Of a stretch of 64,000 nucleotides of DNA, positions 13,105-39,927 are shown piece after piece (within the stretch, counting starts at the first letter, position 1; each line of letters starts with the position of its first letter). Source of the stretch: Scyliorhinus canicula (lineage: Eukaryota); the NCBI RefSeq assembly GCF_902713615.1, contig NC_052152.1:52551810-52615809 (forward strand), given 5' to 3'. The notes below the pieces were generated by a model. The model made no database searches, had not been told where the DNA came from, and was given only the letters and a program-made list of their open reading frames with translations. A program made the translations under genes and the position numbers.

Positions 13105-13110
13105 TTTATT
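13105..13110 (-). terminator. Candidate polyadenylation signal (AATAAA) for the IGSF3-like transcript
   Basis: TTTATT on the plus strand ~500 nt downstream of the putative stop. An ATTAAA also lies at 13238-13243. Confidence 0.45.
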
Positions 13111-13609
13111 GGTGAGTTGTACTCTCATTAAACAACATTCACTGCTTGAAAGACATCAAGGTTGAATTTTTTCGAGAGGATACTGGAGGACATGTACAGA
13201 AGTTGAATCTATAGCATTTGAACATATTATTCAATGTTTTAATGTGCACCCTAGATATCAATGAACAAATCTGACAAATGGTCAGAAATGAGCATATACC
13301 CCCTGCCCACATCATATTGGACACCTAAGAAGTCATTTAGCCTGAGGAATGGGTGTGGCATACTTGAACCTCCAGCTCATTAACCACACATTCATGCAGT
13401 GTAGTCCTTGTGCGTGACAACATCATAACAATGCTGCATGGCTTTTCTGGGTCTTCTCCATGCCTAACCATAAAGAGAGTTGCCAAACACAAAACGATGA
13501 CTCTTGAATTTCTTTGACCACTGTAATTTTTACAAGGAAACCACTCGGTAAATTGAAGAAAGTTGCTGGGCGTGTTCTTGGCCCAGTAAAGCAATGATGT
13601 TTCTCTCCA

Positions 13610-13710
13610 TTAGATCAGCAGTAGGATTGCAATGTAAAGAAAGAATATCTTCCAGGTTTGCATGTGCATCCAGGGTGCCTGTGAACAAGGACTGGTCCTT
13701 GTCTTGTAAT
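13610..13710 (-). CDS. Putative terminal coding exon of the IGSF3-like gene encoding a GPI-anchor-like C-terminus (DYKTRTSPCSQAPWMHMQTWKIFFLYIAILLLI*)
   Basis: Acceptor tttctattgcag|AT. The phase-1 frame continues from exon 3 and ends in 12 hydrophobic residues followed directly by TAA. About 500 nt of non-repetitive sequence and an AATAAA follow. Not in the supplied ORF track in this frame. Confidence 0.65.
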
Positions 13711-14099
13711 CTGCAATAGAAATGTATTCCTGTGAGAACCAGTTGTGTTAAAAATACCATTTGAGAACTGAAGAGTATAAATTGACAAATATTTGAATAA
13801 AGTATCAGCAAAATGATTGGTTGCTGAACACCTCCGGGTGCTCCGGTTTCCTCCCACAAGTCCCGAAAGACGTGCTTGTTAGGTAATTTGGACATTCTGA
13901 ATTCTCCCTCTATGTACCCGAACAGGTGCCAGAGTGTGACGACTAGGGGCTTTTCACAGTAACTTAATTGCAGTGTTAATGTAAGCCTACTTGTGACAAT
14001 AAAGATTATTATTACAGGACACAAGACAGAGGAAGAATTAATGGCAATCGGAGGACAAAGAACAGTGCTCAGTGAAAACAATGCTTAAGAACAAGTGAC

Positions 14100-14970
14100 A
14101 AGTGGCTCAGTGGGGGAAGGGAAAGGGTATTTTTCATTGGGACAATAAATATTTGGATAATAAAAAGTGGTCAAGATTGAGGAGAAAGGTTAGTCTAAAG
14201 TTGTTGAACTCAATGTAGACTCCCAAGGGCTGTAACGTACCTACTCAGAACATGAGGTGCTGCTCCTCCAGTTTGAGCTTTACTGGTAAACTGCAAAAGG
14301 CCAAAAACTGACATGTGGGTGTGAGAGCAAGATGCTGATTTGAAGTGGTAAGCAACAGGAAAGTTGGAGTCATGCTTGCGTACTGAGCGAATGTATTTCG
14401 CTTAATGGTCACTCAATCTGTACTTAGTCTCCTCGAGGTGACCAAGTTGAAGGAGGTGCAAGTGAAATGTTGCTTCAAGCTAAATGAGTGTTTGGGGCCT
14501 TAAATCATGAGGAGGAAGGATGTAAAGAAAAAGGTATTTCACATTCAGCGATTGCAAGAGAAGGTGCCGTGGGGAGGGGATGAGGAGTTAGTAGTGATGG
14601 AGGAGCGTATCAGGGTTTCACAGAGGGAGCGGTTCCTGCAGAATGCTGACAGTGGAGGAAAGAGTTGGTGAAAATGGCAGTGGATGATCCTCTGAATGCG
14701 GAGGCTTATGGGGTGAAAAGTCAGTATGAGGGAAATTCTGTCATGGTTTTGAGAGGGGGGGAAGGGGTGAAGGCCGAGGTGTGGGAGATGGGTCAAACAC
14801 AGTTGAGTTCCCTTCAACCACACCTCAGTTAAGGAAAAAAGCAGGCATGTCAGAAGTGCCATTTATTGGAACAGATACGGTGGAGGTGGAGAAACGGGTA
14901 GATTGGGATGGAGTTTGAAAGGAAGTGGGGTGTGAGGAGCTGCAGATCAGGTAGCTGTGAGAATTGGTGT
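14100..14970 (-). mobile_element. Degenerate Penelope-like element fragment (RT C-terminus/GIY-YIG region)
   Basis: DRISLILTFHPISLRIQRII..HF...PLSAFCRNRSL...HGTFSCNR resembles Penelope-like linker motifs. Confidence 0.65.
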
Positions 14971-15006
14971 CAGGGTAGATAATCCAATACATTTCTCCCT
15001 CACCTT

Positions 15007-15690
15007 TGTAGTATTATCATAAATGTAAGAACTGCAGGGGTTAATTAAATGTTTAGAATGTGGGCAGCACGGTAGCACAGTTGTTAGCACTGTGGCTTCA
15101 CAGCGCCAGGGTCCCAGGTTCGATTCCCCGCTGGGTCACTGTCTGTGCGGAGTCTGCACTTTCTCCCCATGTCTGCGTGGGTTTCCTCCGGATGCTCCGG
15201 TTTCCTCCCACTAGCCTAGAAAGACGTGCTGTTAGGTAATTTGGACATTCTGAATTCTCCCTCCGTGTATCCGAACAGGTGCCGGAATGTGGCGACTAGG
15301 GGCTTTTCACAGGTACCTCATTGCAATGTGAACCTACTTGTGACAATAAAATTGATTTAAAAATTAAGAATAACTACTAGAGGGAGCTACAGTTAGAAGT
15401 ATATAAGGCATTGATGCTAAGCCTTGTGAGGAGAGAGTTAATTAGAGACAGACTGAAGTAAAGATAGTGTGAGTAAGAGCAGATCATAGTTTCTAACAGC
15501 ATAGAGATTAGTTGTAGGTGAGTGTAGTTTATATGTTAATAATCAACTATGTATTATTTAGGAGTACGTTTCGAATCCAAATTCCGAGTGTTAATAAATT
15601 TATAGCTTTGCTCAAGTTCGAGCTATTTTGTGGTCTTTGTGAACACTAAGCCAGCCATCCTGAATTTAGCCACACAAAGAATACCACAAC
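15007..15690 (+). mobile_element. Solo-LTR-like element (same family as 4657-5062) containing a SINE at 15062-15350
   Basis: Shared blocks TAGTATTATCATAAATGTAA and CTATTTTGTGGTCTTT...CCATCCTGAATTTAGC. Confidence 0.65.
15062..15350 (+). mobile_element. V-SINE with an alternative (GTGACAATAA) tail
   Basis: V-SINE head and core followed by GGCGACTAGGGGCTTTTCACAG...TGTGACAATAAA. Partial copies at 10330-10475, 13832-14013 and 30900-31070. Confidence 0.85.
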
Positions 15691-16346
15691 TCTAACTCTG
15701 AAGAAGAGTCATACGGACTGAATATGTTAACTCTGTTTCTCTCTCCACAGATGCGGGCAGAATTTCTGTGTCCACTGCATTTTCTGTTTTTATTTTATAT
15801 TATATCAAAAGCAATCTTCTTGACTTTCAGTGTCGTTGCATTATCGAAGAGAGCAGTCTGTTGGATGCCAGTCTTCAAAGAATATCTTATTACTGTCTTA
15901 AAACTGAACATTAAAAAAATCTACGTTCCATTTGTGTACTAGAAGAGCTGTAGCTCGCCACAAAACTACACTAGCTGCAGCCAATTTAATTCTATCCCAA
16001 TCCCTATTTCATCTTTGGAATATTTTTGCTTGGCAGCGTTTTAAGTAGGTCAACAGATTTGCAATGTTAGCTATTAATATCTGAATGCAGCTATTGCATT
16101 TTGGCAGATAGTCATCCATCAACAGAATCGAAACAGCGTCACCAAGAAAATGCCATTGCCAAGTGTGTGGCTTAGTTATGTGACTCCCCTGTGTGTGCAT
16201 ATGTGATTTCAAAATTAAAATGGCTATATTTGTACAGAATCATTCAGGTTTCAGACGTGGCCTTGTTTAACAGAATCGCTGAAATTCTAATCAAGGGAGG
16301 TCTACAACAAGGTCTGACTGCCAGACCAAAAGCAAATCACTTGTGA

Positions 16347-16530
16347 AGATGAAATGAAATGAAATGAAAATCGCTTATTGTCACGAGTAGGCTTCAATGA
16401 AGTTACTGTGAAAAGCCCCTAGTCGCCACATTCCGGCGCCTGTCCGGGGAGGCTGGTACGGGAATCGAACCGTGCTGCTGGCCTGCTTGGTCTGCTTTAA
16501 AAGCCAGCGATTAGCCCTGTGAGCTAAACC
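16347..16530 (-). mobile_element. Short tRNA-derived SINE with a (TTTCA)n tail
   Basis: GGGGCTGGTTTAGC-type head and GTGACAATAA tail. Other copies at 33190-33363, 34555-34739, 36960-37104 and 63118-63321. Confidence 0.82.
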
Positions 16531-16579
16531 AGACAGGGTGAGACGAAAAATAAGAAGCTCATGCTAACCTGCAATGTTT

Positions 16580-16793
16580 CTTTTAATAAATTTAGAGGAC
16601 CCAATTCATTTTTCCAATTAAGGGGCAATTTAGTGTGGCCAATCCACCTACTCTGCACATCTTTTGGGTTGTGGGGGCGAAACCCATGCAAACACGGGGA
16701 GAACGTGCAAACTTCACATGGACAGTGACCCAGAGCTGGGATCAAACCTGGGACCTCGGCGCAGTGAGGCTGCACTGCACCACCGTGCTGCCC
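16580..16793 (-). mobile_element. Short V-SINE variant with an AT-rich tail
   Basis: Tail AATTGCCCCTTAATTGGAAAAA...CTAAATTT. Other copies at 29323-29549, 37275-37497, 38140-38325, 40423-40634 and 56180-56415. Confidence 0.82.
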
Positions 16794-17113
16794 AACCTGC
16801 AATGTTGTAACATTGTAAAGTGTACTGCTTTTAAAGTGTAGCACTGTTTATCCTCAATACCTATCTGAATTAAAGACTATATCAGTACAAAAACATATTA
16901 ATGTACAGTACAGTTAGCATTTTAGCACAGATGACAGAATTTAAAAATATGGCACTTTGAATGCTTTTATACAATATAGCAAGCACTATTACTAATCATA
17001 GAATATGGCATATATAGATTTTGATGACTGTAAATTTACATATTTTCAAATATTTGAACAAATAGTATTATTGGTAACACTATCACCAGAATAGGGTCTG
17101 TCCAAATACATAC

Positions 17114-17530
17114 CTTGTATTCTTGCTGGTTTTATATACACTGTTGTATTTTCAGTGAACTTATGGGCAATATTATACCAGGATTTATCTGGGTCCTGCA
17201 CCCACTCTCTAGCCTCACAATAAAACTCTCCCTGATCAAACACTTGTAGTTTGCAGATGCTGAGTTTGAAGGAAGTGACTCCAATCTTGTCCAGTCGTAC
17301 ATCTCCTGATGCCTGTCTTTGTTTATATCTTGCTCCAGAATGGAGAATGAAATCTCGTGTCAGAGAGATGACCTCGAGATTCTGATCTCCCTTCCGTAGG
17401 TACCATGCGACAGCCACGTGCGTGTGCTGGGATGTTTGCCTGGATACTTCACAACTCAGTTCCAGGGAGTCACCTTCAACTTTATCCAGGGTCTGGGGTG
17501 CCAATACTGCCCTGAGTGTGTCTGGAATGA
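17114..17530 (-). CDS. IGSF3: IGSF3-like gene, coding exon 3 (IgV domain 2, EWI-type motif present as EWV)
   Basis: Acceptor ttattttag|TCATT and donor CAAG|GTATGT; 417 nt, phase 1-1. Translation VIPDTLRAVLAPQTLDKVEGDSLELSCEV...VAWY...ISLTRDF...DQGEFYCEAREWVQDPDKSWY resembles IGSF3 domain 2. Confidence 0.93.
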
Positions 17531-18180
17531 CTAAAATAAATAAGAACAGTGATATTTTTCAGTCAAATGCGACGTTGAATTATTGAAAAGAACAAACTGC
17601 CAGTTAATGATTTCTATTTGTTTTTAATCAATTAATTAATTAATATAAATAAATATTTGAGCAATGCAAAGTTTCCATATGATAAAATTAAATATTCCTG
17701 TAATTTGACTGAGAACAACAACGACAAACTATATTTATCATGTGTCCTTTACATTGAAACGTGTCCCAATGCACTTGACATAAACATTCGCAAACAGAAA
17801 TCATCACAGAAGCAAACATATTGGAAGAGGTGACCATAAATGCACAGACAAAAAAACTGGACTTGAAGGTGGGACAGGGGCTAGGATTGTTGTAGTGGCA
17901 GGGCCAAGTGGTTTAGGGAGGAAAGCTGCTGTGTTTAGACTCCATATAACTTAGGACTCATCTGCCAATGGTGGGATGAAGAGATTTCAAGATGCGCAAG
18001 AAGGCAAAAGTGAAGAAATGCAGACTGTTTGGAGGATTATAGAGCTGGGGAAGGTGAGTGATTGGGAGCAGTGGGACTGTAATAGGATTTGAACAGGAGA
18101 ATGCTAATTTTGAATCTGAGGCTTTATTGGCCATGGGGATAATGTAGGTGAGCGAGGGCAGGGATGATGGATGTTATACT

Positions 18181-18524
18181 TAGAACATAGAACAGTACAG
18201 CACAGAACAGGCCCCTCGGCCCTCAATGTTGTGCCGAGCCATGATCACCCCACTCAAACCCACATATCCACCCTATACCCGTAACCCAACAACCCCCCCC
18301 TTAACCTTACTTTTATTAGGACACTACGGGCAATTCAGCATGGTCAATCCACCTAACCCGCACATCTTTGGACTGTGGGAGGAAACCGGAGCACCCAGAG
18401 GAAACCCACGCACACAGGGGGAGGACGTGCAGACTCCACACAGACAGTGACCCAGCCGGGAATCGAACCTGGGACCCTGGAGCTGTGAAGCACTTATGCT
18501 AACCACCATGCTACCCTGCTGCCC
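18181..18524 (-). mobile_element. V-SINE
   Basis: Full head and core, with a (TTCTATG)n tail. Confidence 0.85.
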
Positions 18525-19577
18525 ATTCAGGAATCTTGAGTTCCCATGGCACCTTTCAGTTTGGCATCTCCACATCCTTTTAGTTTAACAGTTATGGACT
18601 TGTTCTTCTAATTGAAGGCCTAAGGTGGCATTGAGGTCGAAGGCCAGCTTGATCTAGTTAAATAGGCTTGAGAAGCCGAATTGCCTGCTACTGTCTCTTT
18701 GTTCCTCTGCTCCTAATGTTCCAACCTGTTTCATTACTAAAAGGCAAATGACAAACTTTGCATTTATTACTCTAGTGCACATAATCTGTCTTTCCATAAC
18801 AATTCCCTGTGACGTGCACTTTAGAATTAGAGAGCCTTAACCAATGCCCTGCCAAATTGAGGGACTCACCACAAAACCTCCCACAACTTCCAGACGTGAT
18901 GCCCATGCCAAAGGGCACCAAGGACATTGGAGCCCGAGTGCCAGGGACATGACAGGGCAGTGCAATAGCGGAAGTAAGCCAAAAGCACCTTAATGCAAAC
19001 TGGATGACTGTCCCTTTTAAATAGCATTAGTAGCAGAGAGCCCATGTTGAGCTGTGGGTGATAAACCAAGGCATCCACTGGACTTGCGTGTCCATATTTC
19101 AGTTAGCTAGAATGGCTGTGTGATGCCACAATCTGCCCACTGCAAGGGCTTTCCACATATTCATTCCATGTCCATGTTCGTGCCCTTCACAGTAGGGGAT
19201 AGCTTGCACACCACACTGGAAGTGGCCAGAAGCGCCATGTGCATCATTTCCTCATTTCATGGCTTCTTTAGCATTGGCAATTGTTTTGGCTCAGATGGAC
19301 TTAATGGTTATTTTAGTATCACAAAATTGAGCTGCAGCATGCCAAGAGTATCAGCTATAAAGATCAGCTCATTATAATGATGACTTAGGCTACTGACTGT
19401 ATTGATCATCGTAATCAGGCTGTACTCTATACGGTGATTTCATTTCACTCTCAGTTTGATTTGCTGTCAGTTCGACCTCCTATTGGTTTCCAGTTAATAG
19501 GTACATTATCAGAGGGGGTGATTCTCCGGCCATGTTGCTCCAGGTCAGGAGAATAGAGGGAGAGGCCCTAAATGGGG

Positions 19578-20208
19578 GGCGCGATTCTCCGATCATGGGA
19601 CAGAGTGTCTGCGCCGTCGTGAACGCCGTCCCATTTCACGACGGCGTGAAACGGGCACGGGCAGTAGCGATTCTGGCCCCCACAGGAGGCCAGCACGGCG
19701 CAGGAGCAGTTTATGCCGCTCCAGCCTCACTTTTTGGTGCGTATTGGGGGTGGCGCCGACCCGCGCATGCACAGTGACCTTACTGAATGCTCCGGCCCCG
19801 ACGCTACATGGCACGGGGGTTCAGGGGCCGACGCACAACAAAGTAGGCCCGGGGCGGGGAGAGGCCGGCCCGCCGATTGGTGGGCCCCGATCGAAGGCCA
19901 GACCCCATCGGAGACCCCCCCCGGACGGAGCCATCCCCCCCCCCACAGGCTGCCCCTGACTATTCGCGCAGAGTTCCTGCCGGCAGCAACCAGGTGTGGA
20001 CGGCGCTGGTGGGACTCTGCTTTTTCCGCGCGGCAGGAGAATCAGTGGCCCCGCTATGTACAGCAGCCCGCGACCAGCGCCGCGCCAAACCTGCCAGCGC
20101 AAATGGCGCCGATTTTCCGCACCTCAGAGAATCTCGCGTCGGTTTTGGGGCGGCGTAGCGCGGTTGTGGCGATTCTCCGACCCGGCGCGGGGCTGGGAGA
20201 ATCGCGCC
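19578..20208. mobile_element. Harbinger-type MITE nested in a related older element (~19515-20720)
   Basis: TIRs GGCGCGATTCTCC / GGAGAATCGCGCC. Confidence 0.75.
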
Positions 20209-20984: not shown

Positions 20985-21866
20985 TAAGAACATAAGAACT
21001 AGGAGCAATGAGATCATGGCTGATCTTTTGTGAATTCAACTCCACTTTCCCGCCCAAACACCATAACGCTTTATTCCTTTATTCTTCAAAAAACTATCTA
21101 TCTTTATCTTGAAAACATTTAATGAAGGAGCCTCTACTGCTTCACTGGGCAAGGAATTCCATAGATTCACAACCCTTTGGGTGAAGAAGTTCCTCCTAAA
21201 CTCAGCCCTAAATCTACTTCCCCTTAATTTGAGGCTATGCCCCCTAGTTCTGCTTTGACCCACCAGTGGAAACAACCTGCCCGCATCTATCCTATCTTTT
21301 CCCTTCATATTTTTATATGTTTCTATAAGATTCCCCCACAGCCTTCTAAATTCCAACGAGTACAGTCCCAGTCTACTCAACCTCTCCTCGTAATCCAACC
21401 CCCTCAACTCTGGGATTAATCTAGTGAATCTCCTCTGCACACCCTCTAGCGCCAGTACGTCCTTTTTCAGGTAAGGAGACCAAAACTGAACACAGTATTC
21501 CAGGTGTGGCCTCACTAACACCTTATACAGTTGCAGCATAACCTCCCTAGTCTTAAACTCCATCCCTCTAGCAATGAAGAACAAAACTCCATTCGCCTTC
21601 TTAATCACCTGTAAACCTACTTTTTGCAACTCATGCACTAGCACATCCAGGTCTCTCTGCACAGCAGCATGTTTTAATATTTTATCATTTAAATAATAAT
21701 CCCGTTTTCTGTTATTCCTACCAAAATGGATAATCTCACATTTGTTAACATTGTATTCCATCTGCCAGACCCTAGCCCATTCACTTAACCTATCCAAATC
21801 CCTCTGCAGACTTCCAGTATCCTCTGCACTTTTCGCTTTACCACTCATCTTAGTGTTGTCTGCAAA
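20985..21866 (-). mobile_element. 5'-truncated CR1-type LINE 3' end with an open RT C-terminus
   Basis: FADNTK...LQRDLDRL..W...RPHLEYCVQFWSP...RGHSLKL motifs and a (TTCTTATG)n tail. Confidence 0.9.
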
Positions 21867-24800
21867 TTGGCGAGCATCCAGCACCTGCAGGCACAGATGG
21901 AGGAGTCCAACCACGTGCAGGAGCAGGGTTGGTGCCAGCCATGTGTGCCACCCAGACCAACACCACATGGGTGGCATTCGTGGTGGAGGCCATGGGGGCA
22001 AGGGTTTCAGCAATGGTTCAGCATGTCCAAGGCCTGGGGCAATCTGTTCAGGCAGTAGCTGAGGCCCAGGACAGGGCTGCCCTCTCACAGGCATGGCCCA
22101 GTCAAAACGAGCCATGGCTGAGAAGGTCTGTGGCATTCCCTAGGAGCTTGCCGACGTGGCACAGGCAGAGAGGAAGATGGCAGTCACTGGCTGATGTGCA
22201 CAGACCCAGAAGGTGGTGGCACAGTCACAACATGATGTGGCGCAATCCTAGACGGAAGTGATCCACTCACTGTGCTCCATGGCTGTGAGCATGCAGGCCC
22301 TGGTCGAGACGGCAGTGGTCCTCCAGGACTGGCAGCACCAGGTGGCGGGAGAGCCTCAGCGATAGCTGCGTTCGCACCCCCATCCCATGGAGTAGCCCAG
22401 GGGCCATCTGCACTCCAAGGGGGGGGAGGCGGAGGTGATGGGGCCCATGCTGATGACTCCCACAGGGAAGATGCCGGGACACCGCAGCACCTCAGATTCC
22501 TACCTTCCTGGTCCTGGCACATCTGATGGGTAGTGGGCAGAACAGAGTGGCACCACGCCACCCGGGACACCCGAGCAGCAGCCAGGTCCATCCAGGCCCG
22601 GTCACCCCAGAAGACTTCTGCCAAAGGGGACCCAGGGCGCAGGGCAGGCTGCCTCCATTCCTGATGTACCATCTGGGGGATCCACCTTAAGACCAGAAAG
22701 GTAGATACCAGCTAGGTTGGCACGGGAGCAGGGCACAGTTTAGTGATGGGGGCTGGGACATGTATCTGTAAATATGATGTCACATCAAACACCTGTACAA
22801 TGTTACAACCTGCCTCAGTGCTCTCTATCTGTTGGGTGTGAGGGGTGGGCTGTTGTGGAATGGTGCAGCAGGTGGGGGGGAGGGAGGGGGGGAAATGGGT
22901 GGATATTGTGGGTGGGCTTGGCTCAGTGACCGCAGTTCAGCCAGCGCTCACCATTCCGGTAACCCACCCCCCCAGTCCTGGTCCCCACATTTGCCAACAC
23001 AGGGAATCGATGGGACCGTGTGATGGAATGGCCAGCTCGCATGCAGGGATCACCCAGGTGGACAGTGGAAAGTGCTTCTGTGGGCATGAGAGGCGGTGGC
23101 ATAGTGGTATTGTCATTGGACTAGTAATCCAGAGACCCAGGATAATGCTCTGGGGACCCGGGTTCGAATCCCACCACGGCAGGTGATGCAATTTAAATTC
23201 AATAAAGTATCTAGAATTAAAAGTCTAATGATGAAACGATTGTCGTAAAAACCCAACTGGTTCACTAATGTCCTTCCGTTTAGGGAAGGAAATCTGCCAT
23301 CTTTGCCTGATCTGGCCGACACATGACTCCAGATTCACAGCAGTGTGGTTGACTCTTAACTGCCCTCTTGTGGTAAACCACTGTTGCACCTATATTAGGT
23401 GATGTATGGTAGGACCTGTACTACAGGTACGATGGTAGGCTCTGCCTGCTGGCTCCGACCAGTAGGCGGAGTATAAATATGTGTCCTCCATGCTGCAGCC
23501 ATTTTGCCAGCTGCTGTGGGAGGCCCCACATCTTAGAGCAATAAAGCCTCAGTTGTATTCAACGCTCGTCTTTGTGCAATTGATCGTGCATCCCCCCTCA
23601 AGGGAAATTAGGGATGGGCAATAATGCTGGCACAGCCTGCAACACCCACGCCCGATGAATAAATAAAAAAGATGTCAAATGATGTGGAGCATCAAAGCTC
23701 ATCCCAGAGCAGGTTGTCATCATTCTCTATCCCATGGACCAGTCCCGCCCCACTGTTACTGCCAACCCAGGGCCCGCGCACCCCCCCCCCCCCCCCCCCA
23801 CAATACGGCAGCCATGTATCACCAATGGGATTTCAGGAGGAGGGGGGCAGGTGGTCGGCATCCCACCCTCCCCCTGAATGGGTGAACCTGAAGGCGCACA
23901 TTTTGTGCGGCCTCCCATGCCTGCCTGGGCCCCATGTCCAGTCCATCCTCATCCTCCCCCGCATCCTGCTCGTTGGACAAGGCCTGGCATCATCTTCGTC
24001 CTCCAGCACATCGCCCCCCCACCCTGTTGCACGATGTTGTGGAGGACACAGCAGGCAGCCACGGTGCAGGCGACCCTCTCAGCATCATATTGGAGGGCTC
24101 CTTCAGAGTGGTACCTGAACCGCATCTTTAGGATGCCGAAGCACCTCTCGAGCACGCTCCTGGTCGCTACGGGGCTGCTGTAGCAGGTCTCTGCATTGGT
24201 CTGTGGCCTCCAGCTAGGTGTCGTTAGCCATGACTGCAGTGAATAACCCCTAAAGCCCAGGAGCCAACACCCCAGCCGGGGGTACGCCTCGAAGAGGCCG
24301 GGAATCGTCTTATGTGCCTGGATAAAGACATTGTGCACAGTGCCTGGGTATCGGGTGCAAATGTGCATAATGCGCATCTCATGGTCACACAACAACTGCG
24401 CGTTCATCGAGTGGAACATCTTTCAGTTTGTGTAGAGCGGCCTGTCGTCTGCAGCTGCCTGTAGGGAGACCATCCCGTCAATCACCCGCTGGATGCAGGG
24501 CATCTCGGTGATGGCGGCTAACCCCGCCGCCCGGACATCCTTGTGGGCTCAGTCCACATTAAAATGGATGTAATGTGCCGACTGGGCATAGAGTGCCTCC
24601 ATGACGGTGTGGATGAACCTGTGCACCAATCTCTGTGAGATCCTGGACAGGTCCCCACGTTGCGTATATTTCAGGGCGACCATCACCTTGATGGCCACCG
24701 GGAGTAGGTCTCCTCCCCCATACTCCCGCGATGCCAGGTGCTCAGCCGGAGCCTTCGCCTGTCTGGTTCACAGGCCCTCCAAAAACATCCGCTGCTGGTA

Positions 24801-25532: not shown

Positions 25533-25563
<31 letters not shown>

Positions 25564-28480: not shown

Positions 28481-31400
28481 TGAGACATTACAGGCAAATT
28501 CACATTCTGGCTCCCAGGTTCACTCTGACCCCGCTTCCCGGGACCCTCATGGGTCAGAGTTCGTGTGCTCCCTGCACGATGGGTCCCGAGCCAGTTGCAT
28601 GGACCGCCAGGGCAAAGGGGCCATGCTACCACATCCCTCCCACCTTAAGTCCCTCAATTAATAAATGGACAAACAGGCTGTAACCAATAATTATATTCAA
28701 TATAAGACTGAGGAAACAAAGGGGAAGAGCGTTCAAACAGTGCATCAGAGCGTGTTAATTTATCAGGAACTTTCCTGGGCCTCAACGATCGTCTTTATTC
28801 CCAAACTGGTTCCTCCAACTCAGAGGTATGAATGTCGTCACAATTAGCAGAATGTTCTTGAGGGTCACACTGGTGCACGATATGTTCAATGTCCTTCTCT
28901 AAGCCAGGCCACATGTTATAGCTACGAGCGAACATTATCATTTTTGTCTGGCCCAGATGGGTTCTATGCAATACTTGCAACAAGGGCTCTCAGACTGGGG
29001 GTGGAACTACCACCTGGGAACCCAAAGTATGACTCCATCCTCACAACTCAGTTTGTTCTTATGAGTAAGTTACAGACTTAATTGGTCAGTTAGTTGTGGT
29101 GCCACCTGGTCAAAATCATGTGTTTTACCTTGGACAGGACTGGGTGTCGTTGTGGCCAATTCTTTATGTGACCAACCAAAACTGGCAAGGTGTCCAAAAC
29201 GTTCAATGCTAAGACACTTTCTGGAGGTATCGATGGGGTGCTATACTCTTTGGAAATAGGAGCTGACTCAATGCATCAGCATTCAAAATCTTTTCCCTGC
29301 CTTTGTTTAAAGATGTAGTCATAGGACAGCATGATGGCGCAGTGGTTAGCACTGCTGCCTCACGGTTCCAAGGACCCGGGTTCGATCCGGGCCCCGGGTC
29401 ACTGTCCATGTGGAGTTTGCACATTCTCCCCGTATCTGCGTGGGCCTCACCCCCACAACCCAAAGATGTGCAGGGTAGGTGGATTGGCCACGCTAAATTG
29501 CCCCTTAATTGGTAAAAAATGAATTGGGTACTCTAAATTGAAAAAAATAGAAAGTTGTAGTCATAGGCCACCAGCAATAATGCCCACCATTATACTCTGG
29601 CCGGGGCAATTGGTGGTATTGACTTATCTTGAGGAAGGAGCCCGAGCAGGGGCTTATGGTCCTTTATTAACTTAAAACGTTGGCATTAAACATGCTGGTG
29701 AATTCCTTGACTCTGTAGATTATGACAAGGTCTTCCTTCTCAATTTGCACGTATTTATGCTCAGCATCAGAAAACATTCCTTAGGCAAAGGTAGTTGTCC
29801 TCGCTGAGCTGACCTCCATTGTATGAGAAGTGCCCCTATCCCTTACAGCAAAGCATCGCAGGCACAAATGATGGGTTTTCTTGGGTCAAAATGAACCAGT
29901 CGGCTCAAAGGTTGCAAGACCTGCAAGAGCATAAGCAATTGCGCCAATTTCGTTGTGAGATTTGGAATAAAACTACCATAATGGTTTTCCATCCCTAAGA
30001 AGGACTTTTAACTCTGTTACGTTCTTAGGTGGCAGTCCTTTTCCTATGGCTCTCACCTTGACTTCAGGTTGGTGCAGGCCCTTTGAACCCTAAGTAAGTG
30101 ACCTCACTCGCTTTGGAAAGTGCACTTTTTACATTTGAAATGGATTCCCGCATCTCTCAATCTTCTCAACACCTCTTTGAAAACTTGCTAGATGCTCCTC
30201 CTATGATGGTCCCGTTATTAGGACTTCACCCACATAGACCTGAACCTTTACGATGCCTTGAAGGAGATTCTCCATTTTGCAGCTCTTGGAATATTTAAAA
30301 CTTGCTGGTTTATTTTGCACAGGCCAAGGAGATGCCAAAAGTGTATTGGAATAGACCTTTGTGCATGTTAATTATTGCAAACATTCAGGAATCCTCATCT
30401 AGCTCCAGTTGCAAGTACACATGACTGAAGTCGAGTTTGCATGTGAGGCTCTCCGCCAACTTTACATAATGGTGTTAATTTTTTAGAATTGGGTATTTAC
30501 TTGGGCTGTTTGGTTTATTGTAAGCTTGTAGTCCCTGCAAATCCTAACTGAGCGGTCGGCTTTAATACAGGAACGATGCGGGCTGCCCACTTTGAAAACT
30601 GCACAGGTGTGATTGCTCCAAGTTCTTCCAGGCATTTAAGTTCGGCTTACACTTTTTGATGCAAGGCATTAAGACTGGTCTTGCACTAAAAAACTTGGGT
30701 GTTAAGTCTGGGTTGACATAAATCTTGGCCTTCACTCACTTTATTTGATCCAAATCGTTCTGAAACACGTCTTTGTATCTGTTGAAGACTTTCTGAAAGA
30801 TGCTGTCCGAGGTTTAAAAAATGTCCAACCAATTTAACATGATTTGGCGCAATCAATCTCACCCCATCAGACTTGGTTGATGCAATAATTATAACACTAA
30901 TTTTTATTAGTATCACAAGTAGGCTTACATTAACACTGCAATAAAGTTACTGTGAAAATCCCTTAGTCGCCACGCTATGGCGCCTGTTCATACACCGAGG
31001 GAGAATTCAGAATGTCCAATTCACCTAACAAGCACGTCTTTCTGGACTTGTGAGAGGAAACCGGAGCACCAGGATCGCCTGGGCGATCTCAATCGTCCTG
31101 TCCAGGGTAGTCTTCATTTTCAGTCAGCCATTTCTTCTGCACACTTTTTGTGTTAATAATGCAAAGTTAACTATCACGCAATATGTTGCCCACATAGAAA
31201 CACAGAAAATAGGGACAGAATGAGCCATTCAGCTCTTTGAAACTGCTCCGCGATTCATTATGATCGTGGCTGATCATCCAACTCAATAGCCTGATCCTGC
31301 CTTCTCCCCATATACTTTGACCCCCTTTCCACCAAGTGCTATGTCTAACATACAGGGCGCAATCTGACAGAAAATTTTCAAAGTGTGATAGCAAGCGGGA

Positions 31401-32500: not shown

Positions 32501-33624
32501 TCAGGTAATGTGTCCAGGTCACAAAGTCTGAAGGGGTGCCACGCAGTAACACCTGCCTGCAACACGGCATGTCTACCCACAGGTATCCACTTGTGAGCTA
32601 TGAAGTGCTCCTATTACTGACATTGCCAATTCTCGATTGGCGATATCCTTCGGCTGTGCGGCCAGAGGCCGGCACGGTCGGTGGGGGTTAGAGTGACCTG
32701 CACCAGACTATCACGGATGAGAGTCTGTATTGGAGGTGTTCGGTGGGATGGACAGGTAGAAGCTGAGTTCGCCCCTGGTATGGGTGTACACAATCCGGGG
32801 GGTGACATGTCAGACCCACGGGCACTAAGCCCCCTGTCCCCCAGCCCGGTGGCGGCTAATACCCTTGACGGGTCCTGACCCCCCCCACCCTGAACCGGAG
32901 ACTACCCAGTGGCCCCCGGGCTGAGTGCCCATTTACCAAGATAGCTACCCACCTCCATAGCAGCCATTTCGATAGCTTCACAATTTTAAATAGGTGTGCT
33001 AAACGGCACCCACATGACTGCAGTTAGATCACGGGTGGCCGTTAGATAGAGGGTCCTTGCTGCTAATCGGATGAAGATTGGCTTCAATTGGTGATTATTC
33101 ATTTCTCGCCACATTCATCGCCATCTTGCCAACGGGAGTGGGCCAGTTAGATCGGAAACTGATTGGCACCTGGCACGCTTCCCAATTAATAATAATAATA
33201 ATTGCTTATTGTCACAAGTAGGCTTCAATTAAGTTACTGTGAAAAGCCCGTAGTTGCCACATTCCGGAGCCTGTTCGGGAGGCCGGTACGGGAATTGAAC
33301 CCGCGCTGCTGCCTTGTTCTGCATTACAAGCTAGCTGTTCAGCCCACTGTGCTAAACCAGCCCCGATTTCAGACTCCCCCATGATCTAATTGTTTATCCT
33401 TCTCCATTATTTCATTTGCCCTGAAGAAGTAATGGAATTGCTCAGTATATTGATTCCAGTCTTCGGCCCCCTGGTCGAATGGGTCTATTTTCCCAATCAC
33501 GGGCATTTTTCACTCACTGTTCTCTGGTACTGTCGACCTTTTCCAACTCTATGTGTGTCTTGGAGGCTTTCCTCCCCTCTACGAATTTGACGTCTGTGAC
33601 TTGGGGTTGATCCAGTTTATACTT

Positions 33625-34235
33625 GTCACCAATGTGGTGTCTCAAGGCAATACCAGGTAGATAGTAAGTGTTTATTGGCAACTAACAAGGGTAACACATG
33701 TACAGGCACCAAATCTGTAATATAAGTGTTAAGATGCTGAATCACGGGTTCAGTCTGACAAGAACCCCACTCCTTGGGACCTGTACTAATCCCTCATGGG
33801 TCAGGGTTTGCGCTTCCAGTTTGCGGGGGTAGTGCAGCATAGTGATTAGCACAGTTGCTTCACAGCTCCAGGTCCCAGGTTCGATTCCCGGCTTGGGTCA
33901 CAGTCTGTGCAGCGTCTGCATGTTCTCCCCATGTCTATGTGGGTTTCCTCCGAGTTCTCCGGTTTCCTCCCACAGCCCAAAGACGTGCAGGTTAGGTGGA
34001 TTGGCCAAACAGATTGGGTGGAGTTACTGGGTTACTGGGTTATGGGAATAGAGTGATAGTGTGGGCTTGCATAGGGTGCTCTTTCCAATGGCCGGTGCAT
34101 ACTCGATGGGCCGAATGGCCTCCTTCTGCCTTGTAAAATCTATGATTCTGATGCTGTGATTCCTCACGATGGGCCCTGGGCCAGTCATGTGGACCGTGAG
34201 GGCACGTCCCTTAAAGGGGTCACGCGACTACAACA
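33625..34235 (-). mobile_element. LTR-like sequence interrupted by a SINE
   Basis: TG...CA ends and similarity to the LTR-like fragments at 26910-26995 and 28540-28628. Confidence 0.45.
33833..34150 (+). mobile_element. V-SINE with a CR1-type tail
   Basis: Same family as 2302-2640. Confidence 0.85.
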
Positions 34236-34239
34236 AGAA

Positions 34240-35165
34240 CATGGCAGATGGGTATAATGTGGTGAAGTGTGGAGTTATCCACTTTGATCGCTAAAATAAA
34301 AAAAAATATTTTTTGAATGTTTAAAGACTGGAAAACGTTTGCATTCAGAGTGGCCTCGGTGCCTTTGTCCATGAATCAAAGAAGGTTAACATGCAGGCAG
34401 AGCAAGCAATTTATATGTTAGTTTGTTACAAAGGGATTGGAATACAAGAATTATAAAGTCTTACTACAAATATCTAGGGCATTGGTGGAAACACGGTTGG
34501 AATACTGTACGCAGCTTTGATTGCCTTACCAAAGGAATGACACATTTTCCCTCAATGAAAATGAAAATGAAAATCACTTATTGTCACGAGTAGGTTTCAA
34601 TGAAGTTACTGTGAAAAGCCCCTAGTCGCCACATTCCGGCGCCTGTCCGGGAGGCTGGAACGGGAATCAAACCGTGCTGCTGGCCTGCTTGGTCTGCTTT
34701 CAAAGCCAGCGATTTAGCCTGGTGAGCTAAACCAGCCCCTGGTGCAATTAAGGTTCACTGAACTAATTCATTGGATGAGGGGTTTGTCCTATAAGGAGGG
34801 ATTGAGTAGGCGAGGCCTTATATTCTGAGGTGATCTAATTGAAACATATAAAATTCTTAAGGAGCTTGACAAGGTGGATGCTGAAAAAATGTTTCCTCTT
34901 GCTGGTGAATTTAGAACACTGGTTCAGCCTCAGAATAAGTACTGAGGTGAGTAGAAATTGCTTCACTCAAAGGATTGTTAATCTTCAGAACTCTCTATAC
35001 CAAAGCTGTGAATACTTGGGGCGTGAGGGAATTAAGGGAGCTAGGGACAGTGCAGGAAAGTGGAGTTAAGTGGTAGGTTAACCATGATCATACTGAAGAG
35101 CCGGGTCAAAGGTCCTGATGGCCTCCTCCATTTTGTTAAACATAACATACTTTTATGTTTATGTA
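34240..35165 (+). mobile_element. Degenerate CR1-type LINE 3' fragment containing a SINE
   Basis: RT C-terminal remnants (GDLIETYKIL) and a CR1-like tail. Confidence 0.7.
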
Positions 35166-35415
35166 TCAGTCTGAGACAGTCTAGACCTGAGTGTAATAAA
35201 GTTTCAAGTTTCCACCACCACTTCCTTCTCTTTAACAGAAATGAAATGAGGAACTTGGGCATGTGGTAGGATCAAACTATGTGAACTATTGAACGCATCA
35301 ATAGGGTTTGATGTTGCTACTCCACAATTTTCTGGTAGTACTCACTATCTTTTATGAATCTATACAGTTTTGCTATTCTCTAAACATAATTTACTATGAA
35401 AAATTATACATAACA

Positions 35416-36138
35416 GGTGCGAATCAGTGACCCCATTGCCCCCCTTGTGGATCTGGGTACAATAGATGAATCGCGAGGGAGCCTCAAATCGGGTTTTGCA
35501 CCGGGCGCCGGGCCAATCAGAGTCACCCTCCCTGGGCGAGATCCTGAACTAAATTTTTTAATGAGCTGGATTCACTGGGGCTCATCGGCCAGGCCTGGAA
35601 GATCTCGTCAGGGCACCATTTAGTACTGGACCACACAAACATGAACCAGGCATAAAGGCACATGGAGGGGTCTCCTAGGTGATTGAAGACCTCTGGGTGG
35701 ATGGGGGCAGGGCAGGATGGCACTCCCCCGGGCACCTTGGCACTGCCAGCCTGGCACCATGGCAGTGCAACCCTGCCACTGCCAGGGTGCCCGGGTGCCA
35801 CTGGCAGGGTGGCAGGCTGACAGCGCCAGGTTGACACTGCCAGGGGTCGGGTGGCTTTGCCAGGTAGAGGGTTGGGAGGTTGTCGGGGCTTCCCCTGGGG
35901 GAAGTGAGAGGGGTCAAATGACATGGGGGGAGGACCTGAAAGGGTGGAGGGGGGAAAGATTGGCGCTGCCACAAAATGGTGCCCTGATCTGAACTCGCCA
36001 GCAGGAAATCCCTCTAAGTGCGGCCTGGATAAAAAAAACAGCAAAGTGCCGTTGGATAGCAAAGTGTTTCTCGGTGCTGTAACCGCTGAGAAACACCCAC
36101 TAAATGTGTCTGGGTCCTGGGTCTGCTGAATCGTGCCC
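35416..36138. mobile_element. Harbinger-type non-autonomous element
   Basis: Degenerate TIRs GGTGCGAATCAG / CTGAATCGTGCCC and internal TGGCACTGCCA repeats shared with 20400-20580. Confidence 0.6.
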
Positions 36139-36432
36139 TATATGTTCCTTCTGCATGATAGTACTACTGTGCTGCTCCTGGTATAACCATGTTTGGTTGT
36201 GAATCTGCTACAATATCATGATGATTGATTCTTGTTTTTTTCCAACCTTGGTAGTATATCCTGAAATATCAATTCTTTGTTATTTTGTCAGTGACGTGGA
36301 TTGCCAAAAATTGATCGCCCCACATATTAGGAAGTTTCAACCCGTCTTAAAGTCTGATGAGGATTGAGGGAATTCAAATGACCACAAGAACCACAAAACA
36401 GCTTTACTGAAGAAATGGACAAGTGCACTTGC

Positions 36433-36810
36433 CTGCCAGAGTCATCATGGCTCGGTACGACCCATGGTATACACGGTCCATGTTGGGGGTGTGACACTCA
36501 TATTTCCCTTCATCTGTTTTCTGCAGCTTTGTAATGTGTAACAGCACCGAGTCTGCTTTAATCCTCTGTATATAGATCTCATTATTCTGCACCCTCTTAC
36601 TATACGCGGCATAAGGGAAATCGGAACTAGCTGTGCTGATAATCTGGATTTTCAGTGAAGGCTGATCTGGTTGAAAGATAGACCACTCGAAGTTCTGCAC
36701 TTGTGATTCCTGATATCCACTCACATTGCACTGGATGGTTATATGGTATCCTTCAGTCCGGACAAGTGGGCCCCTTTGTGTTTGCACTTGTCTCTGAGCA
36801 ACAGACAGAT
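36433..36810 (-). CDS. IGSF3: IGSF3-like gene, coding exon 2 (IgV domain 1)
   Basis: Acceptor ...ttgatgcag|ATCTG; 378 nt, phase 1-1. Translation QRQVQTQRGPLVRTEGYHITIQCNVSGYQ...FEWS...DEGKYECHTP...GSY closely resembles IGSF3 domain 1 as I recall it. The donor is CAG|GCAAGT (GC type). Confidence 0.92.
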
Positions 36811-37799
36811 CTGCATCAAGGTATAAACAAATGCTTTATTTAATGTGTATACACCAACCTCTTCTGAAAAGACACACGCCCAATAAAAATAGAAAGAGTA
36901 CAGAAACATCAATGCTGTTGAGTGAGCAAAGCCAGATTTCCCGTGGAACTAAGGAAGAGCGAAATGAAATGAAAATCGCTTATTGTCACAAGTAGGCTTC
37001 AAATGAAGTTTGAAGGAGGCTGGTACGGGTATTGAACCCACGCTGCTGGCTTGCCATGGTCTGCTTTAAAAGCCAGCTATTTAGCCCTGTGCTAAACCAG
37101 CCCCTTGATTGGTTTGGCTCAGTTGGCTGGACCACTGGTTTGTGATGCAGAGCGGGGCCAACAGCGTGGGTTCAATTCCCGCAATGGCTGAGGTTTTTCA
37201 TGAAGGACCTGTGTTCTCAATCTTGGCCTCACCTCAGGTGTCGTGATCCTGACGTGAAATCGCCACCAGTCGGAGGGCAGCACGGTGGCACAGTGGTTAG
37301 CACTGCTGCTTCACGGCGCTGAGGACCGGGGTTCAATCACGGCTCTGGGTCACTGCCTGTGTGGAGTTTGCATATTCTCCCCATGTCTGCGTGGGCCTCA
37401 TCCCACAACCCAAAGGTGTGCAGGGTAGGTGGATTGTCCATGCTAAATTGTCCCTTGATTGGAAAAAACGAATTGGGTACTCTAAATTTATTTTTAAAAT
37501 CACAACCAGTCAGCTCGCCCCTTAAAGGGGAAAGCAGCCCATGGTCATCTGGGACTATAGAAACTTTACTAACTTACTTTATCACCTTATAAAGGGCAGA
37601 AAATCAGGAGGCAGCAATTTGATAGAGTCAATACAGTGAGGAACTCTTGGCTCTGCATTTTACTTCATTGCACCACCTGAAACTGGATGGTATATTAAGA
37701 TGACAAGGCGTACGTGGTTATATATTTTGTCCTTATGAGAAGGAACATAAAATGTGTTAAATTGTGACCTCCTTCCAGAGATGGGTCGATGCTACCTCC

Positions 37800-38125
37800 A
37801 GTATTGAGGCCTTTGCTGTTTGTGGTTTATATAAATGATTTAGATATGAATGTGGGAGAGTTGATCAGTAAGTTTGCGAATGATTTGTAAATTGGTGGGG
37901 TGATAAATAGTGAGGATGCTAGCCTTCGATTGCAGGAGGACGTAGACAGGCAGGCTAGATGGGCTGATCAGTGGCAAATGGAACTCAATCCGTATAAGTG
38001 ACAGGTGATGCACTTGGGCAGGACAAACAATGCAAGGGAATGCATGGTACACGGCAGGATTGTGGGAAGCATCAAGGATAAGAGGCGTCTTGATGTGCAT
38101 GTACACTGGTCCCTTAAGGGAGCAG
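37800..38125 (+). mobile_element. CR1-type LINE RT fragment
   Basis: YINDLD...ISKFA...LQEDVD..WADQWQM remnants. Confidence 0.7.
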
Positions 38126-38329
38126 AGCAGGAGAGTACAGTGGTTAAGTGGTTAGCACTACTGCCTCACGGCGCCGAGGACACGGGTACGTTCCTGGCCC
38201 CGAGTCACTGTCTGTGTGGAGTTTGCACATTCTCCCCATGTCTGCGTGGGTCTCACCCCCACAACCCAAATATGTGCAGGGTAGGTAGATTGGTCACGCT
38301 AAATTGCCCCTTCATTGGAAAAAAGGGGC

Positions 38330-39179
38330 CGGGGCATCGGAGGCCACTGGATGAGGTAGGCATCTGGCTGCCTTCACCTCAGATGTGCATCCTGGGAAAC
38401 ACCTGGATGTATAGAAGAGCTAGGAGGGCCAGGCACATTGAGGATCACTGAGGGCACCAGGGGAGGGGGGTAGGTAGGGGGTAGGAAGGGGTGGTGGTTG
38501 GGGGTTGAGGGGTGGGGGGCGGCACCACCTGGAGTAGGGTACTGTGCAGCACATTAATCTCCTTTTTCGCAACCATTATGATGCCTCTGACACTTTCTTC
38601 CACAATGCGCGCTGACCCCGGCCCCTTTGCCCATCTCTTCAGGCAGCCCGCCCTCCCCATTGTGCTCACCCACCCTCTGGCTGTGGATATGTCCCCGGAG
38701 CTGTGTCCCATTCCCTGGGTGTTTGGTGTTGCGTGTGTGGTGTTGAGTCCTGCAGTGTTCAAGCACGTGTCCAGGCATCAAGGATTGATTGGGATGCTAG
38801 GCAATGACTCCCACATGCTACATGGCCCACCCACCCAAGGGAATCCACTTGGCTCCCCACAGAAGCCCTTCCACAAGGTTCACGTTTTTCAAAAGGAGTA
38901 CTAATCGACGCCAGCGTGAACACTTGCTGGGGAGACCGCTGAATGACAAGAGGCTGTAGGATATGGGGTGGCTCTTATTCATTGTATGGAAATAGGGCTT
39001 AACCGGTGATAATTGGTGTCTCACCACACTACGGTGAGATTCAGATTTTGCCTACGGGAGCGGGCTGGTTGCATCACAAACTGTTTGGCAGCTGGCGGGA
39101 ATCTCATTTTTGGCCTCTCCCGCTATTTACCAGCCTTGTTACGCTTGAGCGAGGGCGCAACAATCGGAGAATCATGCCC
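38330..39179. mobile_element. Harbinger-type element right arm
   Basis: Ends in GGAGAATCATGCCC; GC-rich subterminal sequence like the other copies. Confidence 0.55.
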
Positions 39180-39848
39180 TATGACTTTATACACATATTC
39201 ATGCTGGTATCATAGTGTTCAATGCACAAAATAACCTATGTGTAATGCTACCATATAACCAGAAACTGGGCAATGTCAGTATATTGTTTAAATGTGGACT
39301 GATCTCTGGTTTATATAATCTTAGGGATAATTTTTTTTAAGCATACAGTCAAATTATTCTCGAGGTGTATCCTGGAATTTTACTTTGATGTTAATATTGA
39401 CTTTACGTATTTGTGATCTATCACACCTAATTTCTTTCTTGCTTCTTTGATAAAATGCACCAATTTAGTTTTGTTTTTATGGTGGCTCCTACTAGTTTCA
39501 CAAGCATCCACCTAGCTTTCACCAATCAGTTGCGTACAAGTTCTCAATACATGTAAATGTAACGTTGCTGTAAAACTTACTTTTTCATGTTCATTGCTAT
39601 TAATTGTCTAAAAATATGACTTCCCTTTGAACTACATTGGATTGATATAGATATATATTTCATTAACAGAGTGTCACAAAGTCGTGGCATGATGTTAAGA
39701 ACAGAAATATATGTTGATAAAATTTGGACTGCAGCTCATTCAAATCTATCGGTTTACACCCATTAAAGTTGAATTGCAGTGGAAATAGTTAAGTGTTAAG
39801 CCAAAAGGTTGATGTAAGGCAGCTGATAAGCAAATAAGAAGCACTTAC

Positions 39849-39927
39849 CCCAACAAAGTGCAATAATTCCACAGTGAAAGATCCAAACAAGTTTAAACAT
39901 GTTGAGGTGTTTGGAATTTCTCTTCAT
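39849..39927 (-). CDS. IGSF3: IGSF3-like gene, coding exon 1 (signal peptide MKRNSKHLNMFKLVWIFHCGIIALCW; alternative ATG at 39900)
   Basis: ATG, then a hydrophobic stretch ending in the consensus phase-1 donor TGG G|GTAAGT. It joins in frame to the exon starting at 36810 (G+AT = Asp, then LSVAQRQV). The 5' UTR boundary is not determined. Confidence 0.75.

What the first reader, a model, noticed from the sequence alone, without database searches (positions are those of the whole stretch)
13610..39927. A two-Ig-domain, probably GPI-anchored IGSF3-like (EWI-family) protein
Seen: four phase-1 exons splice into a 975-nt frame (324 aa) of signal peptide, IgV1, IgV2 (EWV), then DYKTRTSPCSQAPWMHMQTWKIFFLYIAILLLI-stop, with an AATAAA ~500 nt later. 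The last exon is absent from the ORF track in this frame. I found no exon for IgV domain 3 in the remaining 13.6 kb. Established: EWI proteins (IGSF8/EWI-2, PTGFRN/EWI-F, CD101, IGSF3) are type I membrane proteins with 4-8 Ig domains, and EWI-2/EWI-F bind tetraspanins largely through their transmembrane region. A small-residue omega site (here S-Q-A, 24 aa from the end), a spacer and a terminal hydrophobic run with no cytoplasmic tail is the GPI-signal pattern. Inference: this is either a short GPI-linked paralog or an alternative terminal isoform of IGSF3. It would lack the tetraspanin-docking helix and could be a sheddable or decoy EWI ectodomain.
Basis: partly seen in the sequence, partly recalled or inferred. 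Interest (0 to 1): 0.8.

Follow-up and report, generated by a model that had tools for sequence, protein, structure and literature searches.

The report
Short two-Ig shark IGSF3-like paralog
The catshark carries a real, separate, two-domain copy of its IGSF3-like (EWI-family) cell-surface genes that ends in a lipid-anchor-type (GPI-like) tail instead of a membrane-spanning helix; the public annotation models it badly, and neither its transcripts nor its anchor could be tested here.

Summary
The four-exon, 975-nt, 324-aa model is in the sequence as described (Scyliorhinus canicula, minus strand). Both large exons are V-set Ig domains. No other EWI-like exon lies anywhere in the 64 kb.

It is a separate paralog, not an IGSF3 isoform. 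S. canicula and S. torazame each also have a 1024-aa, 7-Ig IGSF3-like gene. S. torazame and Chiloscyllium plagiosum have short orthologs.

Searched against the whole window, that tail hits exactly 13708-13616 (E 9e-5).

RefSeq's two Scyliorhinus models read the last exon in another frame, through a 19-nt upstream acceptor or a 16-nt micro-exon.

The gene is a mosaic. Half of domain 1 is 95-100% identical to the same species' long gene (gene conversion). The end of domain 2 is specific to the short genes across two shark orders.

Unrelated two-Ig, hydrophobic-tailed EWI forms exist in bichirs, gar, amphibians and snakes.

No read-level RNA evidence and no GPI predictor were available. GPI anchoring is an inference. 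The scan has not noted this gene on other DNA.

The parts
39849..39927 (-). Exon 1: start codon and signal peptide. ATG at 39927, second in-frame ATG at 39900, GT donor.
   Evidence: The exon-1 peptide of RefSeq's Chiloscyllium protein (MLQLAWILQCGVFTLLWD) has its best six-frame hit in the whole window at 39900-39850, E 2e-4. The A|QR cleavage context matches the long paralogs.
36433..36810 (-). Exon 2: V-set Ig domain 1, phase 1, GC-AG intron donor (CAG|GCAAGT).
   Evidence: Pfam V-set E 7e-10. 81% identical to S. canicula's long 7-Ig paralog by tblastn. Residues 74-137 are 95% identical to it, a gene-conversion tract.
17114..17530 (-). Exon 3: V-set Ig domain 2 with the E-W-V motif, phase 1, GT donor.
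   Evidence: Pfam V-set E 5e-11. Hits domain 2 of 1000-1200-aa EWI proteins. Its last 56 residues are specific to the short genes: 77% to Chiloscyllium short, 59% to the species' own long gene.
16861..16876 (-). Candidate 16-nt micro-exon (atatag|TCTTTAATTCAGATAG|gtattg). Including it shifts the last exon into the non-hydrophobic frame.
   Evidence: RefSeq's S. torazame protein carries VFNSD between exon 3 and the last exon. The only place on the gene's strand that encodes VFNSD is here, flanked by AG and GT. Its use in S. canicula is not shown.
13610..13710 (-).
   Evidence: The Chiloscyllium tail hits 13708-13616 in this frame, E 8.7e-5; the next best hit in the window is E 0.098. The S. torazame model is colinear with the window only from 13709 downwards, so an exon junction sits at this acceptor. 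Conservation drops after this stop.
13711..13729 (-). 19 nt added by RefSeq's alternative upstream acceptor (cacag|GAATAC) in S. canicula. It gives the other frame (tail GIHFYCRLQDKDQ…VVSL, stop at 13530).
   Evidence: P0039 sequence read against the DNA.
13090..13609 (-). Presumed 3' UTR with ATTAAA at 13243 and AATAAA at 13110.
   Evidence: Together with the terminal exon (13090-13710), 38-95% of its words are held by four runs of one study of unknown library type.
46299..46409 (-). First exon used by RefSeq XP_038658212.1. It has no signal peptide and is probably a wrong or minor 5' exon.
   Evidence: tblastn 100% over 37 aa. The peptide ends in EEEEE with no hydrophobic core.

Best explanation
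This is a functional, separate gene of Scyliorhinus canicula: a short paralog of the chondrichthyan IGSF3-like (EWI-family) genes. It arose by partial duplication that kept the signal-peptide exon and the first two V-set exons and gained its own small terminal exon. That happened before carcharhiniform and orectolobiform sharks split.

The main product is read as signal peptide, IgV1, IgV2 (E-W-V) and a 33-residue tail with the layout of a GPI-attachment signal: small S-x-A site, 9-residue spacer, 12 hydrophobic residues, stop. On this reading the protein would be cut at the omega site and held in the outer leaflet by a lipid anchor. It would lack the transmembrane helix and the charged cytoplasmic tail that define EWI proteins.

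Part of domain 1 is kept nearly identical to the linked 7-Ig gene by repeated gene conversion. The short protein therefore probably shows much of the same domain-1 sequence as the long receptor while being anchored differently.

Shown: exon structure, family, separate gene, orthologs, mosaic history, conserved tail frame. Inferred: splicing in vivo, GPI anchoring, any decoy or co-receptor role.
For: - Model verified. V-set domains confirmed. No further EWI exon in the 64 kb.
- Domain 2 hits 7-8-domain EWI proteins.
- Separate long genes exist: XP_038657947.1 in S. canicula and XP_072369883.1 in S. torazame.
- Short orthologs exist: S. torazame P0173 (90% identical) and Chiloscyllium P0177 (72% identical).
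RefSeq's own stop is not conserved.
- The hydrophobic end is unique among 2040 ORF ends in the window.
- Mosaic history: domain-1 residues 74-137 are 95%, 100% and 98% identical to the same-lineage long gene, against 84-86% between orthologs. The end of domain 2 is 77% identical between short genes and 57-62% to long ones.
- Partition trees agree. The AU test rejects short-gene monophyly in the domain-1 tract (p 1e-20). The short clade has 99/93 support in the end of domain 2, where the test rejects Scyliorhinus short genes grouping with Scyliorhinus long genes (p 0.002).
- Long paralogs have a TM helix plus about 28 charged residues; the short forms end 0-1 residue after the hydrophobic run.
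Against: - No read-level RNA evidence: read laying failed, and no near-identical transcript-derived protein fragment was found.
- RefSeq's two Scyliorhinus models put the last exon in the other frame, giving a 66-87-aa non-hydrophobic tail.
- The upstream AG at 13731-13730 is met first by the spliceosome.
- The one visible nucleotide change between the two catsharks in the tail would turn an Ile of the hydrophobic run into Ser or Asn in S. torazame (inference).
- Shark DNA evolves slowly, so 45% tail identity with Chiloscyllium could partly reflect slow neutral drift.
- Twelve hydrophobic residues is short for a GPI signal, and no predictor was run.
- The tree groups were named after the alignment had been seen.
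Confidence: 0.6

Rival explanations
1. Same gene, but the main product is soluble. Exon 3 joins the last exon through the 19-nt upstream acceptor (13729) or through the 16-nt micro-exon. Both shift to the frame RefSeq uses, so the protein ends in a 66-87-residue non-hydrophobic tail and is secreted. The GPI-like frame would be minor or unused in Scyliorhinus.
For: Two independent RefSeq annotations (S. canicula P0039, S. torazame P0173) use this frame. A 16-nt exon is unlikely to be placed without spliced-read support; this is inference. Both extra pieces have AG and GT flanks in S. canicula.
Against: Chiloscyllium's model uses the GPI-like frame. Annotation pipelines favour the longer ORF; this is inference. 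P0039 is otherwise defective: it has no signal peptide and lacks the first 56 residues of domain 2.
Confidence: 0.2
2. The hydrophobic end is a tail-less membrane anchor rather than a GPI signal, so the protein stays as a type I protein with no cytoplasmic part.
For: The snake short forms have 21 hydrophobic residues followed by 4-12 more, which could span a membrane.
Against: The shark runs are only 11-12 residues, preceded by W-K and followed by 0-1 residue. That is too short for a bilayer by established knowledge. A conserved S-x-(A/G) lies 9 residues upstream in both sharks.
Confidence: 0.08
3. The gene really continues to more Ig exons and a TM exon beyond the window's left edge. The 13710 exon would be a cryptic or minor terminal exon of a long EWI gene.
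For: Introns here are long (19 kb between exons 2 and 3), and only 17 kb follow exon 3 in the window.
Against: Three RefSeq annotations end the gene at this exon. The long 7-Ig gene is a different locus with only 59-82% identity outside the conversion tract. No other gene was called within 10 kb of the orthologous loci.
Confidence: 0.06
4. A decaying partial duplicate with a chance open frame, not a working gene.
For: Expression is unverified. The short-gene branches are longer than those of the long genes.
Against: Open frames, Ig hallmark Cys and Trp, the EW motif, the signal peptide and the tail are kept in two shark orders.
Confidence: 0.05

Closest known systems
Chondrichthyan IGSF3-like long genes: 7-Ig type about 1025 aa (e.g. 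S. canicula XP_038657947.1, Mustelus P0003) and 8-Ig type about 1168 aa; vertebrate IGSF3/EWI-3
   Same: Signal peptide with the A|QR site, one phase-1 exon per V-set domain, EW(I/V)QDPD motif in domain 2. 59-95% identity depending on segment. In the tree it lies inside the chondrichthyan IGSF3-like clade.
   Different: Two domains instead of 7-8. No TM helix and no charged cytoplasmic tail. Its own terminal exon.
CD101/IGSF2 (the name RefSeq gives it: 'IGSF2-like')
   Same: EWI family. Earlier scan notes, not checked here, place PTGFRN about 157 kb away. From memory, CD101 lies next to PTGFRN in human.
   Different: The tree puts the tetrapod CD101 clade (otter, caecilian, bird) elsewhere. 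CD101 has 7 Ig domains and a TM helix.
Other annotated two-Ig EWI-like proteins: bichirs (329 aa), gar (346), bonefish (296), Pleurodeles (320), frogs (295-379), snakes (338-358)
   Same: Signal peptide, two V-set domains and, in most of them, a short stalk and a hydrophobic C-terminal end.
   Different: Not orthologs. The fish and amphibian forms group apart from the shark clade (85/93 support for their own clade). The snake forms sit inside the tetrapod CD101 clade. Two frog models lack the hydrophobic end. The architecture therefore arose, or was kept, more than once.
EWI-2wint (N-terminally cleaved EWI-2)
   Same: A precedent that a shortened EWI protein behaves differently from the full-length form (PMC2270906).
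   Different: It is made by proteolysis, loses domain 1, and keeps the TM helix and the CD81 association.

Membership tests
EWI subfamily of the Ig superfamily (IGSF8, PTGFRN, CD101, IGSF3), as defined in PMC2270906 | Ectodomain made of V-type Ig domains | tested here: met
   Pfam V-set for both exons. Precomputed PF28276 Ig_IgSF3 on P0039.
EWI subfamily of the Ig superfamily (IGSF8, PTGFRN, CD101, IGSF3), as defined in PMC2270906 | Conserved Glu-Trp-Ile motif | tested here: met
   Domain 2 has E-W-V in both Scyliorhinus species and E-W-I in Chiloscyllium, in the conserved CEA.EW.QDPD context. This is a conservative variant of the motif.
EWI subfamily of the Ig superfamily (IGSF8, PTGFRN, CD101, IGSF3), as defined in PMC2270906 | [quoted passage not shown] | tested here: not met
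   The protein ends after 12 hydrophobic residues. No TM or tail exon lies in the window.
EWI subfamily of the Ig superfamily (IGSF8, PTGFRN, CD101, IGSF3), as defined in PMC2270906 | Sequence descent from EWI genes | tested here: met
   Best hits are 1000-1200-aa IGSF3-like proteins. It is nested in the chondrichthyan IGSF3-like clade, with the PTGFRN and IGSF8 clades outside.
EWI subfamily of the Ig superfamily (IGSF8, PTGFRN, CD101, IGSF3), as defined in PMC2270906 | Direct association with tetraspanins CD9/CD81 | not testable with these tools
   Needs co-immunoprecipitation.
GPI-anchored proteins | N-terminal signal peptide | tested here: met
   By inspection: a hydrophobic core and V-A|Q-R, the same site as in the long paralogs. 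No SignalP was available.
GPI-anchored proteins | C-terminal signal: small omega and omega+2 residues, polar spacer, terminal hydrophobic run, no cytoplasmic residues | tested here: inconclusive
   The pattern is present in the catshark (S-Q-A, 9-aa spacer, 12 hydrophobic) and in Chiloscyllium (S-K-G, 9-aa spacer, 11 hydrophobic plus N). This is rule-of-thumb reading only.
GPI-anchored proteins | Positive call by a trained predictor, or release by PI-PLC | not testable with these tools
   NetGPI, PredGPI and bench assays were not available.

The most novel reading that the evidence does not exclude
A paired receptor-and-decoy system in sharks. Repeated gene conversion keeps part of domain 1 of a lipid-anchored two-Ig protein matched to that of the long, tetraspanin-type IGSF3-like receptor. 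Inclusion of a 16-nt micro-exon, or use of an acceptor 19 nt upstream, switches the same gene from a GPI-anchored to a secreted product by frameshift. Unrelated short forms of the same build in ray-finned fishes, amphibians and snakes would then mark a recurrent solution in EWI biology that mammals lack.
Probability: 0.15. Interest if true: 0.7.

Novelty: new variant of a known kind. Interest (0 to 1): 0.5.

Why it matters
EWI proteins are defined, and mostly studied, as partners of tetraspanins, and their definition includes a transmembrane helix and a charged cytoplasmic tail (PMC2270906). A conserved family member that keeps only the two outermost Ig domains on a lipid-anchor-type tail would separate what those two domains do outside the cell from the tetraspanin link.

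Ongoing gene conversion with the long gene suggests the two proteins are kept alike in domain 1. Similar short forms in several other vertebrate lineages suggest this is not a catshark oddity.

There is also a practical result. RefSeq's S. canicula model (XP_038658212.1) appears wrong at its first exon, at the start of domain 2 and probably in the frame of its last exon.

Tried and rejected
- **Read laying (single allowed call, X15, X25, X1, X22 on 12400-17600).** No junction, depth or 3'-end evidence exists in this report.
- **The look-up of sequencing runs.** No holder is on record as RNA. Exon 3 is held at 5-18% by small 'RNA?' runs. The terminal exon plus UTR is held at 38-95% by four runs of one study of unknown type. 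This is suggestive only.
- **Protein search with exon 3, to catch transcript-derived fragments.** Nothing above 60% identity.
- **The look-up of encoding contigs for the S. torazame and Chiloscyllium genes.** Loci were found but no DNA was served, so no codon-level (dN/dS, frame) comparison of the terminal exon was possible.
- **Look-up of a 44-aa UTR ORF.** Not on record.
- **PDB sequence searches.** Only antibody and TCR V domains were found, no EWI entry.
- **Literature searches for GPI-linked or short EWI proteins.** Nothing relevant in the held library.
- **Whole-region trees.** They disagreed on whether the shark short genes are one clade. The mosaic explains this.
- **Rejected readings.** 'Isoform of IGSF3' and 'chance ORF in a long intron', which was my own first guess at 70%.
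Full report
**1. Observation**

The gene is on the minus strand. Every junction is phase 1.

The exon-2 donor is GC (CAG|GCAAGT), a GC-AG intron. A GT donor a few bases on would break the frame.

Pfam calls both large exons V-set. Four full-length EWI proteins searched against the window hit only these two exons, on either strand. ORF listing shows nothing Ig-like in 1-13600.

The repeat next to the last exon (13831-14014) is a SINE. The exon itself and its UTR are unique in the window. The 12-of-12 hydrophobic end is the only one of its kind among 2040 ORF ends in the window. That criterion was set after seeing the tail.

**2. Identity**

A full HMMER scan with domain 2 returns 1000-1200-aa proteins with 6-8 matching Ig domains. 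The best match always falls on their second domain.

Cluster look-ups name the genome and the players:
- The locus is Scyliorhinus canicula. RefSeq already has a 309-aa model here, XP_038658212.1, 'IGSF2-like'.
- S. torazame has a 361-aa model that is 90% identical over domains 1-2.
- Chiloscyllium plagiosum has a 265-aa model that is 72% identical.
- Both Scyliorhinus species also have a separate 1024-aa, 7-Ig 'IGSF3-like' gene on the same chromosome record.
- Sharks and rays have in addition an 8-Ig type of about 1168 aa.

In the 85-row tree the shark short genes sit inside the chondrichthyan IGSF3-like clade. The PTGFRN and IGSF8 clades and the tetrapod CD101 clade are outside it.

Earlier scan notes, which I did not check, place PTGFRN about 157 kb and IGSF3 about 750 kb before the window. 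That would fit the EWI gene cluster.

**3. Which gene model is right**

- Its first exon lies at 46409-46299 and has no signal peptide.
- It enters exon 3 at an internal AG, losing 56 residues of domain 2.
- It starts the last exon 19 nt earlier (13729), which gives another frame.

The Chiloscyllium RefSeq protein is an independent check.

The two tails line up as follows:
- catshark: K-T-R, then S-Q-A, a 9-residue spacer ending W-K, then 12 hydrophobic residues;
- Chiloscyllium: K-T-R, then S-K-G, a 9-residue spacer ending W-K, then 11 hydrophobic residues.

The S. torazame model is colinear with the window only from 13709 downwards. The six residues before that point come from a 16-nt piece. 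In S. canicula this piece lies at 16876-16861, between an AG and a GT.

Sixteen and nineteen nucleotides shift the frame the same way. This looks like a preference of the annotation pipeline for the longer ORF, or a real alternative form.

RefSeq's stop is not kept.

**4. History**

Identity by segment shows a mosaic.

| Segment (model residues) | Comparison | Identity |
|---|---|---|
| Domain 1, 74-137 | S. canicula short vs its own long gene | 95% |
| Domain 1, 74-137 | S. torazame short vs its own long gene | 100% |
| Domain 1, 74-137 | Chiloscyllium short vs Hemiscyllium long gene | 98% |
| Domain 1, 74-137 | orthologs between the two catsharks | 84-86% |
| Domain 2, 236-291 | S. canicula short vs Chiloscyllium short | 77% |
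| Domain 2, 236-291 | short genes vs long genes | 57-62% |

Partition trees agree. In the domain-1 tract each short gene pairs with its own lineage's long gene, and holding the short genes together is rejected (AU p 1e-20). In the end of domain 2 the short genes form a clade (99/93 support), and joining the Scyliorhinus short genes with the Scyliorhinus long genes is rejected (p 0.002). The groups were named after the alignment had been seen.

The reading is one old partial duplication, older than the split of the two shark orders, followed by repeated gene conversion of part of exon 2. This also explains why the quick and careful whole-region trees disagreed.

**5. Mechanism**

The long paralogs end in a TM helix plus about 28 mostly charged residues. 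The short shark proteins end 0-1 residue after an 11-12-residue hydrophobic run.

With a signal peptide and a conserved small-residue site nine residues upstream of the run, the simplest reading is a GPI-attachment signal. This is a pattern argument only. No predictor and no transcript data were available.

The protein fails one defining EWI feature, the TM helix with a charged tail (PMC2270906). I therefore file it as a variant by descent, not as a standard member.

A soluble product through the frameshifting pieces is the main rival (0.2).

**6. Wider pattern and novelty**

Two-Ig EWI-like proteins, most of them with a hydrophobic end, are annotated in bichirs, gar, bonefish, a salamander, frogs and snakes. 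They are not orthologs of the shark gene. The snake forms are nested in the CD101 clade.

I found no paper on GPI-linked or two-domain EWI proteins in the held library.

The gene is therefore known to automatic annotation but, as far as I could search, not described. Its anchoring mode and its mosaic history are the new parts.

**7. Verdict**

- Observation: confirmed.
- Interpretation: partly supported. It is a paralog, not an isoform. The GPI anchor is plausible but untested.
- Interest: 0.5.

Noticed in passing
window 36427-36432 (intron side of the exon-2 donor): Intron 2 is a GC-AG intron with the otherwise perfect consensus CAG|GCAAGT. The RefSeq models end exon 2 at the same residue.
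   Followed up: partly
window 16861-16876 (-): A 16-nt candidate micro-exon with AG and GT flanks, matching the VFNSD insert of the S. torazame RefSeq protein. Including it would frameshift the tail.
   Followed up: partly
model residues 74-137 (window about 36480-36670) against the long paralogs P0344 and P0204: This tract differs by 14% between the long genes of the two Scyliorhinus species, against 2-4% in their other segments. Conversion with the faster-evolving short gene therefore seems to feed changes into the long receptor as well.
   Followed up: partly
window 46299-46409 (-): RefSeq's first coding exon for this gene lies 6.4 kb upstream of the signal-peptide exon, close to a stretch that another first-reader note calls a MULE transposon (43156-45328). 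It encodes no signal peptide.
   Followed up: partly
window, many sites (e.g. 13831-14014, 10323-10475, 15185-15357, 30892-31074): One SINE family is scattered through the introns on both strands (78-90% identity between copies). Its copies produce the recurring ORF motif GHCLCGVCTFSPC in the ORF lists.
   Followed up: partly
window 21036-22136 (-) and 9889-11340 (+): LINE-type reverse-transcriptase ORF fragments lie inside intron 2 and downstream of the gene.
   Followed up: no
proteins P0151 and P0153 (Polypterus): The bichir short gene has two annotated isoforms that differ by a 16-residue stalk segment. Both keep the hydrophobic end.
   Followed up: no
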